Shown one piece after another: positions 1-33,077 of a stretch of DNA of 42,901 nucleotides (within the stretch, counting starts at the first letter, position 1; each line of letters begins with the position of its first letter). This DNA is from Octopus bimaculoides (lineage: Eukaryota): positions 69,290,984-69,333,884 of the forward strand of contig NC_068984.1 of NCBI RefSeq assembly GCF_001194135.2. The letters are read 5' to 3'. A program made the position numbers and the translations under genes. The notes beneath the pieces are model-generated. The model saw only the letters and a list, made by a program, of their open reading frames with translations, was not told the DNA's origin and did not search any database.

Positions 1-1111
1 ATATATATATATATATATAAATATAAATATACATACATATATACATACATCTATAATATAAATTGAACCTGGGCGACCATTGTATTCTTTCTTGTCTCCA
101 GGTTCACGGCCAAACGGCTGGGTGGATTCGCGTGAAAAATGGCACACATGTGGGGACGGATGCACAGATTGGAACGCGCTATGTATTTTTCCTAGCCCCC
201 ATAGTTACAGAGAAAATTGATTAAAACAACCTGCGTACGTGCGTGTATGTGAGTGAGTGTCACTGAAGCCATTTACACATACATACATACATACATACAT
301 AAATAATTACTCGCTCTCTCTCTTTCTTTCTTTTTCTCTCTCTCTCATATACACACACACCATCAACATTACTCTCTCTATCTCGCACATCCCATCAAAC
401 ATACACACACACACACACACAAACATACGCACGCACATTGATTCTTCCGTCACACGCCAACTTCAAAAACTGTCCATATCTCTTTTCATTAGATGCCAAC
501 TTCAAAAGAACCCGTTTCCCCAAAACACATATAAAAAAAATATTTTCACTTTTCCCACCATTGATCGAGAGATAAAACACAAACCAACTTCTGTTGACTG
601 CAAAACTCCCGCTAAATTAGACGCAAAAATCACACGCACACATACACACACACGTCTATTTCATGTATTTCGGTTTCTCTATGATTATACACATGTCCAA
701 TACAATAGATCTCATACATTTTCGTCTTCAACGGGTAAGTATCTATTTTGTAATATAACTTGTTTTTCTATAAGTGTATAACAATTACTTCTTCCATACT
801 CCTTCACATAGCTTCTATCTTCACTTTTCTTAAATTGGATACGTCTGCTATTAATTCTTACATACAATTTCCCCGCTCATTCTTACAGCTTCATTTTCAG
901 TTACAGCAATTCTTAACCTCAACTTCTTAATGCCTCTTCTATATATTCCTAGCGCCCATACTTACCGAGAACAGCGATAGAAACTTTTCTTTTGCAATTC
1001 CCGTTTCTTCGATCATTAGCACAACGAGTTGCTCACACACCATGAACTTTCTCATTCAAACAACATATGTTGAATTAGAGCATAAATACAGTATGGAGAT
1101 TTATCTCCTAT

Positions 1112-1468
1112 GGAAAGTTCCAAGGAAGGGGAGGAATTACTTCGTGGAATGATCCGAGGAGGGTGCGAATAACTTCCTAGAAAGATCCGAGGAATTCCTG
1201 GGAAGTCCCGAGTACTTCCTGGAAAGTTCCGTGGAATTCCTGGGAAGTTCCACTGATTTCATGAAAAGTTCCAACGACGGACATTCCTGGGAAATTCCGA
1301 GGATTTCATGGAAAATTCTGAGGATTTCATGGAAAGTTCCGATAATTTCCTGGGAAGTTCCAAGGAAGGACCCCTGGAAAGCTCCGAGGAGGAGCTACTT
1401 CCTAAAAATTCAGAATACTTCCTGGAAAATTCCGAGGATTTCATGGAAACTTCCGAGTTATTCATAGA
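1112..1468. repeat. 21-bp minisatellite (consensus about GGAAAGTTCCGAGGATTTCMT) running into an assembly gap
   Basis: Unit starts at 1179, 1200, 1221, 1242, 1263, then 1289, 1310, 1331, 1352, then 1424, 1445. Confidence 0.85.
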
Positions 1469-2240
1469 NNNNNNNNNNNNNNNNNNNNNNNNNNNNNNNN
1501 NNNNNNNNNNNNNNNNNNNNNNNNNNNNNNNNNNNNNNNNNNNNNNNNNNNNNNNNNNNNNNNNNNNNNNNNNNNNNNNNNNNNNNNNNNNNNNNNNNNN
1601 NNNNNNNNNNNNNNNNNNNNNNNNNNNNNNNNNNNNNNNNNNNNNNNNNNNNNNNNNNNNNNNNNNNNNNNNNNNNNNNNNNNNNNNNNNNNNNNNNNNN
1701 NNNNNNNNNNNNNNNNNNNNNNNNNNNNNNNNNNNNNNNNNNNNNNNNNNNNNNNNNNNNNNNNNNNNNNNNNNNNNNNNNNNNNNNNNNNNNNNNNNNN
1801 NNNNNNNNNNNNNNNNNNNNNNNNNNNNNNNNNNNNNNNNNNNNNNNNNNNNNNNNNNNNNNNNNNNNNNNNNNNNNNNNNNNNNNNNNNNNNNNNNNNN
1901 NNNNNNNNNNNNNNNNNNNNNNNNNNNNNNNNNNNNNNNNNNNNNNNNNNNNNNNNNNNNNNNNNNNNNNNNNNNNNNNNNNNNNNNNNNNNNNNNNNNN
2001 NNNNNNNNNNNNNNNNNNNNNNNNNNNNNNNNNNNNNNNNNNNNNNNNNNNNNNNNNNNNNNNNNNNNNNNNNNNNNNNNNNNNNNNNNNNNNNNNNNNN
2101 NNNNNNNNNNNNNNNNNNNNNNNNNNNNNNNNNNNNNNNNNNNNNNNNNNNNNNNNNNNNNNNNNNNNNNNNNNNNNNNNNNNNNNNNNNNNNNNNNNNN
2201 NNNNNNNNNNNNNNNNNNNNNNNNNNNNNNNNNNNNNNNN
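1469..2240. other. Assembly gap (others at 3261-3389, 4632-4653, 33085-33100 and 41674-42007)
   Basis: Runs of N. Confidence 0.99.
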
Positions 2241-2245
2241 TAATC

Positions 2246-2510
2246 AAAATTTATACTCCCAAGTTTTACAGCCAACCATCTTGAATGGACCGGCCACTGG
2301 TCAAGATGTTCTTATAACTCCAATGTCCACCCCCACCCCCCCTTCCTCCTATACGATCTACAAGTTTAAGCAGCTTCAAATTCCTGTCAAACTCTCCTTT
2401 GCAATGGCAATAAATAAGGCACAGGGTCAATAATTGCAAATGCTTGGTTTAAATCTCACAGAGCAAGTGTTCTCCCACAGTTAACACTACGTTGGATGCT
2501 ACCGTGTTGC
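2246..2510 (+). pseudogene. Helitron RepHel (PIF1-like helicase) C-terminal relic
   Basis: Translates as QPTILNGPATGQDVLI...FKQLQIPVKLSFAMAINKAQGQ*LQMLGLNLTEQVFSHS*HYVGCYRV. This matches the Helitron motifs FPVRLAFAMTINKAQGQSL and FSHGQLYVACSRV and has two in-frame stops. Confidence 0.85.
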
Positions 2511-2701
2511 CAGGCCACATGTCTATACATTTGTGCATCAGAAGGGAAAACGAGAAACGTTGCCTACAAAGAAGCGGTCCATTGAAAAGACGGCATTTCT
2601 TCACATCAAAATCACCCCAGTCATCTGTTACCTTAAAAGCTTCGTACTTGCCGTGCCAGCCAACGTAAGTCAAAGACACACAACTTCACTCATTCACTCT
2701 A

Positions 2702-2777
<76 letters not shown>

Positions 2778-3620
2778 ACGCGCGCGTGCACGTCCATTTC
2801 ATATGTCTTCCAATTTCTGCTTTGTGCAAATAAATTTTTTACGGATACACCTGCTTACAAAAATTGGGATTAAGGTATAATTTCTTTCTATGTTCATATA
2901 AATGTTTTAATGATTATACAGACGTTCAGTAGAATAGCTCTCAGAAACAGACTACGTACAAATTCTTTCTTCACAACTCCTTAAGCCATTTTCTGACAGG
3001 GGGTGATGAAATCTTCATACAGCTAGAGGCTCCAATTGAAACAGGAGACCCGAAATGATAAGGTTTAGAAATGGTGTAATAGATTATGCCTAACCAAAAA
3101 CGATCACAGCCACACCATCCAAACAGGCCGGGTGAAACCGGGTTTAGCTGCTAGTGGTCAACTTTCTTTTCACTCCAGCCGCTGTGAAGGCAAGACGAAC
3201 TACTAGCGTTCTACCTCAGATTCGCGTTTGGCCGTACGGCTTTTGAACGTTGCTTTCACTNNNNNNNNNNNNNNNNNNNNNNNNNNNNNNNNNNNNNNNN
3301 NNNNNNNNNNNNNNNNNNNNNNNNNNNNNNNNNNNNNNNNNNNNNNNNNNNNNNNNNNNNNNNNNNNNNNNNNNNNNNNNNNNNNNNNNTTCTGTCTTAT
3401 TTTCGAAACGTCTAGATAGAATAGAGACAGCTGATGAAGGGATATTCCAAGTGGCTTTCCGTTTTCCTATGTGTTCGTTCCGTTGTCTGTAGTTCATTGT
3501 TCTAACGTCCTGTACCCTGATATGCATATATATACACATGTAGATGTAAGTATGTACATATATGTGTGTATACATGTATATATATTCTTTGTATTATTAT
3601 ATATATATATATATATATAT

Positions 3621-4343: not shown

Positions 4344-4574
4344 ACATGTCCACTTATCCATTACTATACATATGCACACACATATGTATATGAAGGTGTA
4401 TATCAATGTATGTGTGTGCAGACATATAGATGTATGCGTATATGATTGTGTGCATGTATGTATCTTTGGACATGTATTTGTTTACATCTGTATAGGCATT
4501 TGTGTAATCTCTGTTGACATTTCTCCTCTCAATAAATTGAGTGGTGGTCAGGAGGGAAGGATGATGATGATGAT

Positions 4575-4605
<31 letters not shown>

Positions 4606-6311
4606 TGGAGTAGGAGTAGGAGGAAGAGGGANNNNNNNNNNNNNNNNNNNNNNGGAGGAGGAAGAGGAGGAGGAGGAGGAGGAGGAGGAGGAAGTGGAGT
4701 AGGAGTAGGAGGAAGAGGGATCTTACTGCAGAAGTTTAATATCAGCATTACAATACATGTGTGGACAATGGACTGTTTGGATGTGATTATTTTGGTGCAT
4801 TCTTTGTTAATATGTTTGTAAGCAGAGTTCTGAGTGTGCATGCAATTTTTTGTCTCTAAAATGTGTGTGTGTGTTTGTAAGTTTTCTACAAGTATCTTGG
4901 GAGCGTATAGTTGTATTGCATATAAAAGATGCATTCTATAGTTTTGAAATTACTCTAATCATTTCAATTGACAAAAACAATAAAAACCAATAAGATTGTT
5001 TAAATGTTCAACAGTAGAATTATTTGAACTCAACTGATATTGAGAAGAAAGTGTCAATTTAAGCCAAAAGGAAAACTTTCATTGCTTCCTGTGAGGTGAA
5101 AAATACTATGAAATTCTAGGAAAGAGATTTTTAGTTCCACAAATGACATTGTGAGTGATAAATATTTATTTGCTGAATCAGAATTATTCAAAGATACTCA
5201 GATACAAATCTAAATCTTTGAAAATATTTTATATTAGATTTGCTCACATAAACGTCTTTTTCATCACTGGATATCTTTGAAGACTAGAAAATAGATTTTG
5301 CTGCAAAGCTAAGAAATTATTGTATTCCGTCATCTTGTCTAAACTAAATAATGTAATCAGCAGGTAATACTGAAATTTGATAAAGAAATTTGAAGAACTT
5401 CTGAGAAGCTCTCTATCCTTGACTAAATTAATCAGCGTAAGACTTTGTGAAGATTCTAGTTCATTGGAAATATTGCTCTGAGGACTTTTCACTTAATTCA
5501 AGACTAAATCTACAAATGCAAGCATCCGATTGCTATATTCTAACCATCTTTTACTCATTGAATTCTGATTAATAAATATTCAAGACTTGATAAAGAAGAT
5601 ATTGTTTGGGAAGATGCTGTTTTGTGAATCTTTCATTATCATTTAATGTAAAGGTGGTGGTTTCATGAGAACTTACCACCAAAATTACAGCTGTTGTAAG
5701 TTCTAAACAAACTGTGTCAGTGATCTGGTATTGATTTCTTGTCAAAACCATCTTAGTTGTATTGCACTAATGCAATTTATAACAGTATGAGCATCAGAAA
5801 ATTCCTATTTCCAGTTTCTAAATCTAGTACTTCAAGCTTGTATCAGAAATCCTTTATCATTTGTCCAGAATTTGCAGTGATGAAATTGCAGAAACAATAG
5901 AGCACTAGATTGAATGCTTAGTGGTATTTAGTTTATCCTTCTAAACTCTGAACTAAAATCCACAAGGATTTAAACTTAGAGCTTACAATCTTTAGAGTTT
6001 TCAGTTTTGACATAGCTTGGCATCTCTCTCAAATTCATAAATAAATACCAAATATATAGCATGATTGATTGAATTCCACTGACTACATACATTTCCTTAC
6101 AAAAGTGTGGCTTTATGGCTAAGTAAAATAAGTTATTATTTGACGGGCATTAAGTAAATTTATTAGTAATTTTCATGATGTTGCCAATGTCATTAATGAT
6201 GAGAATGATGGAAGTGGTGGTGGTGGTGGTGGTGAAAACAACCATAGTAGAGGCAACTGTGGTAGTGCTTTCAGTGAGGAGCCTGAAACTCTTAATAGTA
6301 TGTAAATAAAA

Positions 6312-8617: not shown

Positions 8618-8653
8618 TTACCCTAACCCTAACCCTAACCCTAACCCTTACCC
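8618..8653. repeat. Short interstitial (CCCTAA)n telomere-like repeat
   Basis: (CCCTAA)4 at 8621-8644, then CCCTTACCC. Confidence 0.8.
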
Positions 8654-13159: not shown

Positions 13160-13335
13160 GTTCCTTTCGAGTGTTGTGCCTCATGGAAGCAAAGTAGCTG
13201 AGTTCCTTTTGAGCATTGGCCTTATGGAGGCAAAGTGGCTAAGTTCCTTTCAAGCATTGGGCCTCACAGAGGCAAAGTGGCTGAGTTCCTTTTGCTTTCG
13301 AGTGTTGGGCCTCACAGAGGTAATGACTGAGACCT
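13160..13335 (+). repeat. About 42-bp tandem repeat, 4 units
   Basis: Units start at 13160, 13202, 13243 and 13285; consensus about GTTCCTTTYGAGYRTTGGGCCTCAYRGAGGCAAAGTGGCTGA. Confidence 0.8.
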
Positions 13336-28227: not shown

Positions 28228-28665
28228 GTGGAGCACTAAGAGCACCGGCTGAGCATGAGCGTTGCCAGAGCAGCTGTCTGACTTCCACACCAGTGGCATG
28301 TAAATAGCACCATTTGAGTGTAATCATTACCAGCGTCGCCTTCCTGGCACATGGAAAGACATTCGAGCGAGGTCGTTGCCAGTGCTGCCAGACTGGCTCC
28401 TGTGCAGGTGGCACATAAAATACACCATTCTGAGTGTGGCCGTTGTCAGTACCGCCTGACTGACCTTCGTGCCGGTGGCACGTAAAAGCACCCACTACAC
28501 TCTCGGAGTGGTTGGCGTTAGGAAGGGCATCCAGCTGTAGAAACTCTGCTAAATCAGATTGGAGCCTGGCATAGCCATCTGGTTCACCAGTCCTCAGTCA
28601 AATCGTCCATCCCATGCTAGCATAGAAAGTGGACGTTAAACGACGACGATGATGAGGATGATGAT
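28228..28665 (+). mobile_element. Repeat with internal ~60-bp GGTGGCACRTAAAA units and the RTE-type (GAT)n tail
   Basis: Repeated GTGGCAYRTAAAA-CACC...CGTTGCCAG units, then the AGGAAGGGCATCCAGC tail; a homolog lies at 36780-37050. Confidence 0.75.
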
Positions 28666-31787: not shown

Positions 31788-33077
31788 CAGGGTGGGGAAG
31801 CAAAATTTACAATATTTTGAGGCAAGGATTGAAAGACAGTGTATGACCAATTAGTTTATTGAAAGTCATGAGAATTTATTTGCCACAAGAAAATTTACAT
31901 AATAGAAAATGTTTTTATTCCATGTGTCCTCCTTCTTTCTCAATAACTGCCTTCACACGCTTCCTGAAACTTGCGCAAGTGTTCCTCAAATATTCGGGAG
32001 ACAACTTCTCCCATTTTTCTTTAATAGTATCATTAAGAGAGTCGACATTGCTGTGTGATATTCTATTAGTAGCATGTTCTAAAACGCCCCAAATAGCATA
32101 ATCTAGAGTGTTTAGATCTGGGCAAGAAGGCGGCCATAAACATGATTCCAAAAAATTGCTCAAGTTGGATTTGCAGAAATCTTGTATTTTTCTAGCTGTG
32201 TGGGCTGGAGCACCATCCTGTGTCCATACATAATTACCATCTGGGTAGTTTGCTTTAAGCCATAGCAATACCTGGTATCTCAGAGTCTTGTAGTAAGTAT
32301 TAACATTGATCTTTTCATCAGCTTTGTAGAATTTTATAGGCATTTTCTTTCCATCGGAAGCCACAACTCCAAAAGCCATAACCTGAGCAGAATGTTTTGT
32401 TTTGAATGTCCCCTTAACCTCATCTGTTGATTTTGCAATAAATCTGTCATTTCTGTGGTTCAGAACAGCATCAACAGTGAAGATCTTTTCATCTGAAAAG
32501 AGCGTTACAATGGAGGATTTTTTCTTGAACCATGTACTAATTTTATTGCACCTTTCCAATCTCTTTTCCTTCATAGCTGTTGTCAACAAGTGTTTTGGTG
32601 TTCTTGTGTAAGATTTTAACCTCAAATCATATTTTACTGCATTTCTAATGGTCTTGTTGTCTACCTCAAGTTCAATTGCCATCTTTCTCATGGATTTGGT
32701 TGGATCCTTTAGGACTTTGGATTTGAGAGCTTTAATAAAAGCTTTGGTGCGTTTTTTGTTGATTCCTCCACTTCCAGACTTCCTCGTAATGGTTTTGCTC
32801 ATAGCCATTCTATTCTTTACATTATAAACAGTCTTTATGGACACTCCAACTATTCTTGAAATCTCCTTTGGTGTGACGAGTGCATTCAGCAAATCACACA
32901 CTCTTTGACATTTGCTTTCCTTATTACTCACATGGGCAAAAGTTTCTGAAAAGGTAAGGATAATAGTGTCAGGCATTATTTTGACATCAATATATGCTAG
33001 GTTTCAAAACAATTGACTTAGTGCCTGCTGAGAAAAAACAACTTAACGGTCATTGTAAATTTTGCTTCCCCACTCTG
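31788..33077 (-). mobile_element. Complete Tc1/mariner element, DD37D (maT) family, 1290 bp
   Basis: TIRs CAGGGTGGGGAAGCAAAATTTACAAT (31788-31813) and ATTGTAAATTTTGCTTCCCCACTCTG (33052-33077) match at 25/26. TA lies on both flanks (31786-87 and 33078-79). Confidence 0.95.
31915..32976 (-). CDS. DD37D (maT-type) transposase, uninterrupted 353-aa ORF
   Basis: N-terminal HTH-like region; catalytic FSDEKIF, QDGAPAH and PDLNTLDY with 37 residues counted between the second and third Asp. Confidence 0.93.
   Translation of the reverse strand: MPDTIILTFSETFAHVSNKESKCQRVCDLLNALVTPKEISRIVGVSIKTVYNVKNRMAMSKTITRKSGSGGINKKRTKAFIKALKSKVLKDPTKSMRKMAIELEVDNKTIRNAVKYDLRLKSYTRTPKHLLTTAMKEKRLERCNKISTWFKKKSSIVTLFSDEKIFTVDAVLNHRNDRFIAKSTDEVKGTFKTKHSAQVMAFGVVASDGKKMPIKFYKADEKINVNTYYKTLRYQVLLWLKANYPDGNYVWTQDGAPAHTARKIQDFCKSNLSNFLESCLWPPSCPDLNTLDYAIWGVLEHATNRISHSNVDSLNDTIKEKWEKLSPEYLRNTCASFRKRVKAVIEKEGGHME

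What the first reader, a model, noticed from the sequence alone, without database searches (positions are those of the whole stretch)
1112..1468. Helitron-borne, helically phased array of overlapping kappaB-like and STAT-like motifs
Seen: GGGRNNYYCC matches at 1200 (GGGAAGTCCC), 1242, 1289 (GGGAAATTCC) and 1352, with near-matches GGAAAGTTCC, GGAAAATTCC or GGAAACTTCC at 1112, 1221, 1331, 1424 and 1445. TTCN3GAA occurs at 1141, 1174, 1216, 1305, 1326, 1419 and 1440, usually overlapping the kappaB-like word. The 21-bp period is about two helical turns, and the array runs into a 772-N gap, so it may be much longer. Known: these are the Rel/NF-kB and STAT (GAS) consensus sites, and Helitrons have spread regulatory sites elsewhere (HSEs in C. 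elegans, MSL sites in Drosophila miranda). Inferred: a mobile composite immune or stress enhancer cassette, or a transcription-factor sponge. Each unit also holds a two-pentamer GAAnnTTC half-HSE, but no three-pentamer HSE was seen. It could still be a coincidental palindromic minisatellite.
Basis: partly seen in the sequence, partly recalled or inferred. Interest (0 to 1): 0.72.

Follow-up and report, generated by a model that had tools for sequence, protein, structure and literature searches.

The report
Palindromic minisatellite beside Helitron remnant
This is a decaying 21-bp tandem repeat built from the palindromic words TTCC and GGAA, sitting next to a broken piece of a Helitron transposon in the octopus genome; its resemblance to NF-kB and STAT binding sites follows from that one palindrome, and nothing I could test shows it to be a mobile immune enhancer.

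Summary
The array (about 17 units, window 1104-1468, unit TTCMTGGRAANTTCCGAGGAW) is a genuine 21-bp tandem repeat that runs into the 772-N gap. The window is Octopus bimaculoides chromosome CM046604.1.

The kB-like, GAS-like and half-HSE words are overlapping readings of one palindromic core, TTCC-N2/3-GGAA-N-TTCC. One A/G position switches a unit between an exact GAS match and an exact kB match.

Helical phasing does not hold across the array. Indels of 3-6 bp reset the register (Rayleigh R 0.17 at 10.5 bp, not significant). No three-pentamer HSE is present.

A Helitron is present only as the last 90-120 codons of Rep/Hel, right of the gap (2242-2604), with two in-frame stops and a frameshift. 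No Rep/Hel sequence lies left of the array or elsewhere in the window. No second copy of the array or its flanks could be retrieved, so "Helitron-borne" is adjacency across a gap, not shown.

Core columns are modestly better conserved than spacer columns (0.89 vs 0.71, p about 0.02). All changes at the unit's one CpG, which spans the core-spacer boundary, are CpG-decay transitions.

Best reading: an ordinary, decaying, slippage-prone palindromic minisatellite. Low interest.

The parts
1104..1468 (.). Degenerate minisatellite of about 17 units. Unit: TTCMTGGRAANTTCCGAGGAW (21 bp), made of two 10/11-bp TTCC..GGAA palindromic half-units. The left-edge units (1104-1173) are the most decayed. The last unit is cut by the gap.
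   Evidence: TRF periods 21, 10, 42 and 89. Wrap-around alignment to the unit. Autocorrelation and column conservation. Motif coordinates.
1469..2240 (.). Assembly gap of 772 N. It hides the right end of the array and its junction with the Helitron fragment. Gap lengths in the window vary (16-772), so they look like size estimates.
2242..2604 (+). Helitron Rep/Hel C-terminal pseudogene: the helicase segment after the Pif1 2B domain, including the INKAQGQ and FSHGQLYV motifs. It has in-frame stops after codon 63 and at codon 80 of the fragment, and a frameshift near 2511-2523. The protein C-terminus falls near 2582-2604.
   Evidence: phmmer against PDB: Helraiser 7lcc residues 1376-1460, E 1.6e-10. 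tblastn of 147 relatives: P0128 aa 1566-1651 of 1753, P0051 aa 867-950 of 979. P0128 and P0051 carry Helitron_like_N + PIF1 + Pif1_2B. Profile search returns PIF1/PIF6-like helicases of many animals.
277..437 (.). Microsatellite block (ACAT)n, (CT)n, (CA)n upstream of the array. A similar (CT)n(CA)n block lies at 2697-2779, after the Helitron fragment.
   Evidence: self-blastn
651..714 (+). Two short boxes (651-666 and 681-714) that recur in the same order and orientation at 2789-2804 and 2910-2943. Probably pieces of an unidentified interspersed repeat that flanks both sides of the array-gap-Helitron block.
946..984 (+). 39-bp box, 79% identical to 189-227. The similarity begins exactly at TTCCTAG. 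Its nature is unknown. It could be a transposon terminus about 120 bp upstream of the array.
3127..3153 (+). Weak candidate for a Helitron 3' end: an imperfect CCGGGT/ACCGGG hairpin, then CTAG followed by T. Not statistically supported.
   Evidence: Read. Fold z-score 0.04.

Best explanation
The array is a non-coding, decaying minisatellite. It probably grew from a short palindromic seed (TTCC-N2/3-GGAA, about 10.5 bp) by replication slippage and unequal exchange. Two half-units first became a 21-bp unit, and blocks of 2 and about 4 units were then duplicated (42- and 89-bp periods). Because the seed is palindromic, a single strand can fold back on itself. That would favour slippage and probably also explains why the short-read assembly breaks inside the array. 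The kB-like (GGRAANTTCC), GAS-like (TTCMTGGAA), STAT6-type (TTCCTGGGAA), half-HSE (GAANNTTC) and ETS-core (GGAA) words are overlapping readings of this one palindrome and come as a by-product. The array lies next to, and possibly inside, a dead and heavily truncated Helitron copy. Shown: the repeat structure, the motif collapse, the loss of phase, the Helitron remnant and the CpG decay. Inferred: the slippage origin and the absence of a regulatory function.
For: 1. Repeat anatomy. Periods are 21, 10, 42 and 89, with 71-78% matches and the most eroded units at the left edge.
2. Motif collapse. In 12 clean units the consensus is TTCCTGGAAAGTTCCGAGGAT. Column 8 is A in 8 units, giving an exact GAS match where columns 6-7 are intact. 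It is G in 4 units, giving an exact GGGRNNYYCC match. The two exact matches are therefore alternatives, not a composite. GGAA and TTCC occur 17 times each in 357 bp, against 169 and 198 in the whole window.
3. No phasing. Indels of +5, +3 and +6 bp reset the register. Rayleigh R is 0.17 at 10.5 bp and 0.21 at 21 bp.
4. Neutral-looking decay. The unit's only CpG (columns 15-16) is changed in 5 of 12 units, always to TpG or CpA. The window's CpG o/e is 0.29.
5. Fold-back potential. The single strand folds better than shuffles (z -3.3, 1 of 100 shuffles as good).
6. Not coding. All six frames of the consensus unit are open, so the open frames through the array say nothing for coding. The best + strand reading needs a frameshift near 1280. 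There is no Pfam family and no protein relative.
7. Recurrence. Two unrelated metagenome contigs carry independent (GGAAATTTCC[T])n arrays with 10/11/21-bp periods, so this type of palindromic array arises repeatedly.
8. No other copy of the array or its flanks exists in 42.9 kb.
Against: Core columns 1-15 are better conserved than spacer columns 16-21: 0.889 vs 0.710, permutation p 0.02, best of 21 rotations. Selection on the core would predict this, but the comparison is weak. There are only 12 units, they are related by block duplication, and several of the changes counted in the spacer are CpG-decay transitions at column 16.

A random 21-bp tandem repeat rarely carries this motif load (1.5e-4 to 2e-3), so the content is not generic to minisatellites.

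Function was not tested. No binding, accessibility or expression data were available, and no genome-wide copy count could be made.
Confidence: 0.75

Rival explanations
1. The array is an internal (cargo) tandem repeat of a Helitron-type element and is copied around the genome with it. The models are the central tandem repeats of non-autonomous Helentrons (Cg_HINE in oyster, DINE-TR1 in Drosophila). This concerns location and spread. It is compatible with the array having no regulatory function.
For: A Helitron Rep/Hel C-terminal fragment lies on the same strand immediately right of the gap. The layout upstream is microsatellites at 277-437 and 631-653, then about 450 bp of unique sequence, then the array. 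This resembles the Cg_HINE left flank: microsatellite, a 10-500 bp variable segment, then the tandem repeats (PMC7492417). A 39-bp box whose similarity starts sharply at TTCCTAG lies about 120 bp upstream of the array and could be an element terminus. Helitrons expanded in octopus about 25 My ago (PMC13282606).
Against: No Rep/Hel coding lies left of the array or anywhere else in the window. A 772-bp gap cannot hold the missing 3-5 kb of Rep/Hel, so the copy is at best a deletion derivative. No termini were identified, and the candidate 3' hairpin has z 0.04. Microsatellites are everywhere in this window (178 TRF rows), so the HINE-like layout may be coincidence. The helicase relatives end at the helicase, as in canonical Helitrons, not Helentrons. 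No second copy was available to test co-occurrence.
Confidence: 0.25
2. The array is a functional composite Rel/STAT (or ETS/HSF) binding platform. This is the reader's hypothesis: an enhancer cassette or a transcription-factor sponge.
For: There are four exact GGGRNNYYCC and seven exact TTCN3GAA matches in 357 bp, far above shuffles. GGGAAATTCC at 1289 matches the kB consensus exactly. Core columns are somewhat better conserved than spacer columns. The array retains more CpG than its surroundings (o/e 0.72 vs 0.29). There are precedents for Helitrons spreading HSEs (PMC6927752).
Against: All the motifs are one palindrome, and exact kB and exact GAS matches are mutually exclusive within a unit. 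There is no phase coherence and no trimeric HSE. Units are decaying by CpG transitions and indels, and one of these destroys the kB-like word at 1310. No ORF of 90 codons or more that was scanned against Pfam matched a family, apart from a mariner-like transposase. With hundreds of known 12-13-bit consensus motifs, about one match per random 21-bp unit is expected; this is my own estimate, not a computation.
Confidence: 0.04
3. The array is a remnant of protein-coding sequence: a heptad repeat F-[LM]-[EG]-[SN]-S-x-[ED], for example a captured gene fragment.
For: 21 bp equals 7 codons. A + strand frame is open from 1308 to the gap, and several unit spacings that deviate from 21 are still multiples of 3 (24, 48).
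Against: All six frames of the consensus unit are open, and the opposite strand is equally open. Frame is lost at two spacings, 88 and 47 bp. The variable columns are not third-codon positions in the open frame (read). There is no Pfam family and no relative among 5.8 billion proteins.
Confidence: 0.03

Closest known systems
Ordinary minisatellites whose units happen to contain transcription-factor consensus words. From my own knowledge: the human HRAS1 28-bp minisatellite reported to bind Rel/NF-kB proteins. From the literature: hTERT VNTRs with putative NF-kB sites (PMC2915984).
   Same: A tandem array of 10-100-bp units, with degenerate copies and higher-order periods. Factor-like words are repeated once per unit.
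   Different: Those cases have binding or reporter data; this one has none. This unit is AT-richer and palindromic (TTCC/GGAA), not the G-rich type of classical human minisatellites.
Central tandem repeats of non-autonomous Helentrons: Cg_HINE in Crassostrea gigas (PMC7492417) and DINE-1/DINE-TR1 in Drosophila (PMC4067079)
   Same: The host is a mollusc. A tandem array lies downstream of a microsatellite-bearing flank and next to rolling-circle transposon sequence.
   Different: Cg_HINE elements are defined by subterminal inverted repeats, a 3' palindrome and many copies. None of these could be shown here. The protein remnant here looks like a canonical Helitron Rep/Hel C-terminus, and the relatives it was compared with end at the helicase.
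Helitron-carried heat-shock elements in Caenorhabditis (PMC6927752).
   Same: Repetitive factor-like motifs occur in the neighbourhood of Helitron sequence.
   Different: In those cases motif-bearing Helitrons are numerous, bound by the factor in ChIP data, and linked to gene responses. Here there is a single locus, no demonstrated inclusion in the element, and no trimeric HSE.
GGAA-type repeats bound by factors in human cells (GGAA microsatellites and EWS-FLI1; satellite III GGAAT repeats and HSF1). From my own knowledge.
   Same: A high density of GGAA/TTCC cores.
   Different: Those are 4-5-bp simple repeats on one strand. This is a 21-bp palindromic unit in an octopus, and binding is untested.

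Membership tests
Minisatellite (non-coding tandem repeat, unit 10-100 bp) | Head-to-tail copies of a 10-100-bp unit | tested here: met
   TRF period 21: 9.0 copies at 71% matches, plus about 3 copies at 77-78%. Wrap-around alignment gives about 17 units.
Minisatellite (non-coding tandem repeat, unit 10-100 bp) | Not protein-coding | tested here: met
   All six frames of the unit are open, the frame is broken twice, and there is no Pfam family and no protein relative.
Minisatellite (non-coding tandem repeat, unit 10-100 bp) | Copy-number variation between individuals | not testable with these tools
   No population or long-read data were available.
Helitron-internal (cargo) tandem repeat | The array lies between the 5' TC terminus and the 3' hairpin-CTRR terminus of one element | tested here: inconclusive
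   No termini were identified. The candidate hairpin plus CTAG at 3127-3153 folds no better than shuffles. The junction is hidden in the gap.
Helitron-internal (cargo) tandem repeat | Rep/Hel or other family-specific Helitron sequence on both sides of the array | tested here: not met
   Rep/Hel similarity occurs only at 2242-2604, right of the array. There is none in 1-1111.
Helitron-internal (cargo) tandem repeat | The same array is present in other copies of the element | not testable with these tools
   There is no second copy in the window. The protein routes retrieved no same-family octopus copy.
Helentron non-autonomous element with central repeats (HINE) | 5' subTIR plus inverted repeat plus microsatellite, then central repeats, then 3' subTIR plus palindrome | tested here: inconclusive
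   Microsatellites lie upstream but are ubiquitous in the window. No subTIR was found: the 39-bp box has no inverted copy. The right flank is hidden in the gap.
kB (Rel/NF-kB) site cluster | Matches to GGGRNNYYCC | tested here: met
   4 exact and 6 one-mismatch words. 34 of 2000 shuffles reach the exact count, and 0 of 2000 reach the one-mismatch count.
kB (Rel/NF-kB) site cluster | Binding by a Rel-homology protein, or a kB-dependent response | not testable with these tools
   Needs EMSA, DAP-seq or a reporter.
GAS (STAT) site cluster | TTCN3GAA palindromes | tested here: met
   7 matches, with 0 of 2000 shuffles reaching that count. They are exact only in units where column 8 is A.
Heat-shock element | At least three contiguous inverted nGAAn pentamers | tested here: not met
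   0 matches to GAANNTTCNNGAA or TTCNNGAANNTTC in the array.
Helically phased binding-site array | Sites keep a common rotational register (multiples of about 10.5 bp) along the array | tested here: not met
   Spacings are 88, 21, 21, 47, 42, 21, 24, 48 and 21 bp. Rayleigh R is 0.17 at 10.5 bp (p about 0.76) and 0.21 at 21 bp (p about 0.65).

The most novel reading that the evidence does not exclude
The array is one member of a dispersed family of Helitron-carried TTCC/GGAA minisatellites in octopus genomes. Their palindromic cores would be bound by Rel, STAT or ETS factors, so that a rolling-circle transposon has seeded inducible enhancers or factor sinks in a cephalopod. The modest excess conservation of core over spacer columns and the retained CpGs are the only hints.
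Probability: 0.04. Interest if true: 0.65.

Novelty: new member of a known kind. Interest (0 to 1): 0.12.

Why it matters
As it stands, it matters little. It is one more degenerate minisatellite in a repeat-rich, probably intergenic or intronic, stretch of the Octopus bimaculoides genome, beside a dead Helitron fragment.

It is a useful caution. A palindromic GGAA/TTCC repeat will automatically score as kB, GAS, STAT6, ETS and half-HSE at once, so motif co-occurrence inside a tandem repeat counts as one observation.

If the same array proved to be carried by many Helitron copies and bound by immune transcription factors, it would extend TE-driven regulatory rewiring to cephalopods.

Tried and rejected
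- Other copies in the window. Self-blastn of 600-3260 against the window found only microsatellite matches and the array's own internal matches.
- Other copies through proteins. The helicase fragment as a query shared words with 4 candidates and none scored. A six-frame concatenation of the array gave 8000 candidates and none scored, so arrays are not called as genes. A profile of Helitron C-termini returned 7024 generic PIF1/PIF6-like helicases at 37-49% identity. None of the 120 listed that carry a source name is from an octopus, so no same-family copy could be picked out.
- Rep/Hel left of the array. Pfam on six frames of 1-1111 and tblastn with 147 Helitron-type proteins both found nothing.
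- Helitron 3' terminus. The hairpin plus CTAG at 3127-3153 is not better than shuffles, so I do not claim it.
- Coding repeat. Rejected: six open frames, frame breaks, no homologues.
- Tandem Helitron copies. The boxes shared between 631-714 and 2743-2943 suggested this, but nothing helicase-like lies upstream of the left boxes, so I rejected it.
- Metagenome scan for the two-unit pattern. It found only two unrelated analogue arrays.
- A Helentron endonuclease downstream of the helicase. Pfam found nothing in the + frames of 2241-3260.

Full report
**Where the window comes from.** An intact 353-codon mariner-like transposase ORF at 31915-32976 (- strand) is recorded on chromosome CM046604.1 of assembly GCA_001194135.2. 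The 5-kb locus fetched around it is identical to the window. The assembly accession belongs to Octopus bimaculoides (PMC8967140). The window is CM046604.1:69,290,984-69,333,884, and the array is 69,292,087-69,292,451. The window is 35% G+C and has five N gaps of 16-772 bp. It is crowded with microsatellites: 178 TRF rows.

- GGGRNNYYCC occurs at 1200, 1242, 1289 and 1352.
- One-mismatch words (GGRRNNYYCC) occur at 1112, 1221, 1331, 1376, 1424 and 1445.
- TTCN3GAA occurs at 1141, 1174, 1216, 1305, 1326, 1419 and 1440.
- There are also seven TTCN4GAA, six GAANNTTC and no three-pentamer HSE.
- Ten of the window's twelve GGRRNNYYCC words lie in these 357 bp.
- TRF reports period 21 (1174-1367, 9.0 copies, 71% matches; 1396-1465, about 3 copies, 77-78%). 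It also reports a 10-bp sub-period and higher-order periods of 42 and 89 bp.
- Autocorrelation peaks at lags 21 (0.54), 42 (0.44) and 11 (0.42), against a background of 0.25.
- The last unit is cut by the 772-N gap.
- None of 2000 dinucleotide shuffles reach the observed kB-1mm, GAS, STAT6-type or half-HSE counts. Random 21-bp tandem arrays of the same composition reach them in only 1.5e-4 to 2e-3 of trials. The motif load is therefore real and is not a generic property of tandem repeats.

**What the unit is.** A wrap-around alignment segments 1104-1468 into about 17 units. The left-most units (1104-1173) are the most eroded, and indels sit in the spacer. Twelve clean units give the consensus TTCCTGGAAAGTTCCGAGGAT, or TTCMTGGRAANTTCCGAGGAW with its variable columns. 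The unit is two palindromic half-units of 10-11 bp, each TTCC-N2/3-GGAA. GGAA and TTCC each occur 17 times in the array, against 169 and 198 in the whole window.

Every factor-like word is a reading of this palindrome:
- columns 1-9 give the GAS word;
- columns 6-15 give the kB-like word;
- columns 1-10 give the STAT6-type word;
- columns 7-14 give the half-HSE.

Column 8 is A in 8 units and G in 4. With A, the unit reads TTCCTGGAA (exact GAS where columns 6-7 are intact) and GGAAAGTTCC (kB with one mismatch). With G, it reads GGGAAGTTCC (exact kB) and loses the N3 GAS word. Exact kB and exact GAS are therefore alternatives at one polymorphic column, not a composite site.

**Phasing.** The 21-bp register holds only in runs of two or three units. 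Spacings between kB-like words are 88, 21, 21, 47, 42, 21, 24, 48 and 21 bp. The 47- and 48-bp steps put neighbouring runs on roughly opposite faces of the helix. Rayleigh tests give R 0.17 at 10.5 bp and 0.21 at 21 bp, neither significant. "Helically phased array" describes the unit length, not the array.

**Conservation inside the array.** Columns 1-15 (the palindromic core) average 0.889 identity to consensus and columns 16-21 average 0.710. The permutation p is 0.02, and this is the best of 21 rotations. This is the one result that leans towards constraint on the core, but it is weak. There are only twelve units. They are related by block duplication (the 42- and 89-bp periods). The unit's only CpG (columns 15-16) is changed in 5 of 12 units, always to TpG or CpA, so part of the spacer's lower score is CpG decay at column 16. 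This is the signature of methylation-driven decay in a window whose CpG o/e is 0.29. One of these changes destroys the kB-like word at 1310. The array's own CpG o/e is 0.72. This could mean it is young, homogenised or less methylated; I cannot tell which.

**Coding?** 21 bp is seven codons, and a + strand frame is open from 1308 into the gap. But all six frames of the consensus unit are open, and the opposite strand is equally open. The + strand reading needs a frameshift near 1280. The translations match no Pfam family and no protein in the 5.8-billion-sequence collection. I reject a coding repeat.

**Fold-back potential.** The single strand of the array folds at -58.8 kcal/mol, against -44.6 +/- 4.3 for shuffles (z -3.3). 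The segment 1284-1398 gives z -3.5. This fits the palindromic seed and supports, by inference, slippage-prone replication and the assembly break.

**The Helitron.** Right of the gap, frame +2 of 2242-2604 encodes the C-terminal helicase segment of a Helitron Rep/Hel.
- It matches Helraiser (7lcc) residues 1376-1460 of 1496 at E 1.6e-10, and PIF1 helicases more weakly.
- A full HMMER scan of 1.84 billion representatives found 147 relatives.
- Two long relatives, P0128 and P0051, carry Helitron_like_N + PIF1 + Pif1_2B.
- tblastn of all 147 against the window hits only 2242-2604, at the extreme C-terminus of the proteins: P0128 aa 1566-1651 of 1753, P0051 aa 867-950 of 979. A frame change occurs near 2511-2523.
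- The fragment has two in-frame stops.
- A profile search returned thousands of PIF1/PIF6-like helicases from spiders, aphids, bats, nematodes and others at 37-49% identity.

The remnant is therefore real, old and broken. No Rep/Hel similarity and no Pfam domain exists in 1-1111. The 772-bp gap cannot hold the missing 3-5 kb of ORF. A hairpin-CTAG candidate for the 3' end at 3127-3153 folds no better than shuffles. Whether the array lies inside a deletion derivative of the element or merely beside a 5'-truncated fragment cannot be decided from this window.

**Attempts to find other copies.**
- The window holds no second copy of the array or its flanks.
- The collections reachable by DNA pattern do not include the octopus genome. 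A metagenome scan with a two-unit degenerate pattern found only two unrelated contigs, with (GGAAATTTCC[T])n arrays of 10/11/21-bp period. These are analogues. They show that this kind of palindromic array arises independently.
- The protein routes failed.

**Flanks.** Two short boxes (651-666 and 681-714) recur in the same order at 2789-2804 and 2910-2943, each downstream of (CT)n/(CA)n tracts. A 39-bp box at 946-984, about 120 bp upstream of the array, is 79% identical to 189-227, and the similarity starts sharply at TTCCTAG. These look like pieces of unidentified interspersed repeats. The second could be an element terminus, but I could not test that. The layout of microsatellite, variable segment and tandem repeats recalls the oyster Cg_HINE Helentron derivatives (PMC7492417). 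However, microsatellites are ubiquitous here, and none of the defining subterminal repeats were found.

**Comparison with known systems.** Tandem repeats carried by rolling-circle transposons are known in molluscs and flies (PMC7492417, PMC4067079). Helitron-spread HSEs are known in Caenorhabditis (PMC6927752). Helitrons expanded in octopus about 25 My ago (PMC13282606). Minisatellites with factor-like words are also long known. On present evidence this locus is a new instance of a known kind.

**Look-elsewhere estimate (my own, not computed).** A 12-13-bit consensus is expected about 0.005 times per random 21-bp unit on two strands. A few hundred known specificities therefore give roughly one match per unit. 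A GGAA/TTCC palindrome necessarily matches several related consensus words at once.

**Verdict.** The interpretation as a Helitron-borne, helically phased composite immune enhancer is not supported beyond adjacency to a Helitron remnant. The best explanation is a decaying palindromic minisatellite (confidence about 0.75). The cargo-repeat variant (about 0.25) is not exclusive with that reading. A functional binding platform is about 0.04.

Noticed in passing
window 31915-32976 (-): An intact 353-codon Tc1/mariner-type transposase ORF (DDE_3 plus HTH domains). The identical protein is on record as a called gene in GCA_001194135.2, so this may be a young or still active element.
   Followed up: partly
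window 651-714 and 2789-2943 (+): Two short boxes (16 bp and 34 bp) recur in the same order and orientation on both sides of the array-gap-Helitron block. Each lies downstream of (CT)n/(CA)n tracts. They are probably fragments of an unidentified interspersed repeat.
   Followed up: partly
window 189-227 and 946-984 (+): A 39-bp direct repeat, 79% identical, whose similarity begins sharply at TTCCTAG. This looks like the edge of a repeated element. The second copy lies about 120 bp upstream of the array.
   Followed up: partly
window 8620-8653: An interstitial telomere-like repeat, (ACCCTA) x 5.7, 96% matches.
   Followed up: no
window 13160-13292 and 28360-28487: Two further minisatellite-like repeats: a 42-bp unit x 3.2 (83% matches) and a 67-bp unit x 1.9 (77%). 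They are unrelated to the TTCC/GGAA array.
   Followed up: no
proteins P0001-P0004: Several Helitron-type helicase predictions from other genomes contain 3-6 tandem copies of the same C-terminal helicase segment found in this window. This suggests internal tandem duplication of that part of Helitrons, or read-through gene models across tandem Helitron copies.
   Followed up: no
L002 2462-2521; L003 116-227: Two unrelated metagenome contigs carry (GGAAATTTCC[T])n arrays with 10/11/21-bp periods. They are independent analogues of the octopus array.
   Followed up: partly
window, whole; array 1104-1468: CpG observed/expected is 0.29 for the window but 0.72 inside the array. The array keeps more CpG than its surroundings even though 5 of 12 units show CpG-type transitions.
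   Followed up: partly
window 4560-4718: (GAT)n, (GAG)n and (GGA)n trinucleotide tracts flank a 22-N gap. They give long spurious ORFs on both strands.
   Followed up: no
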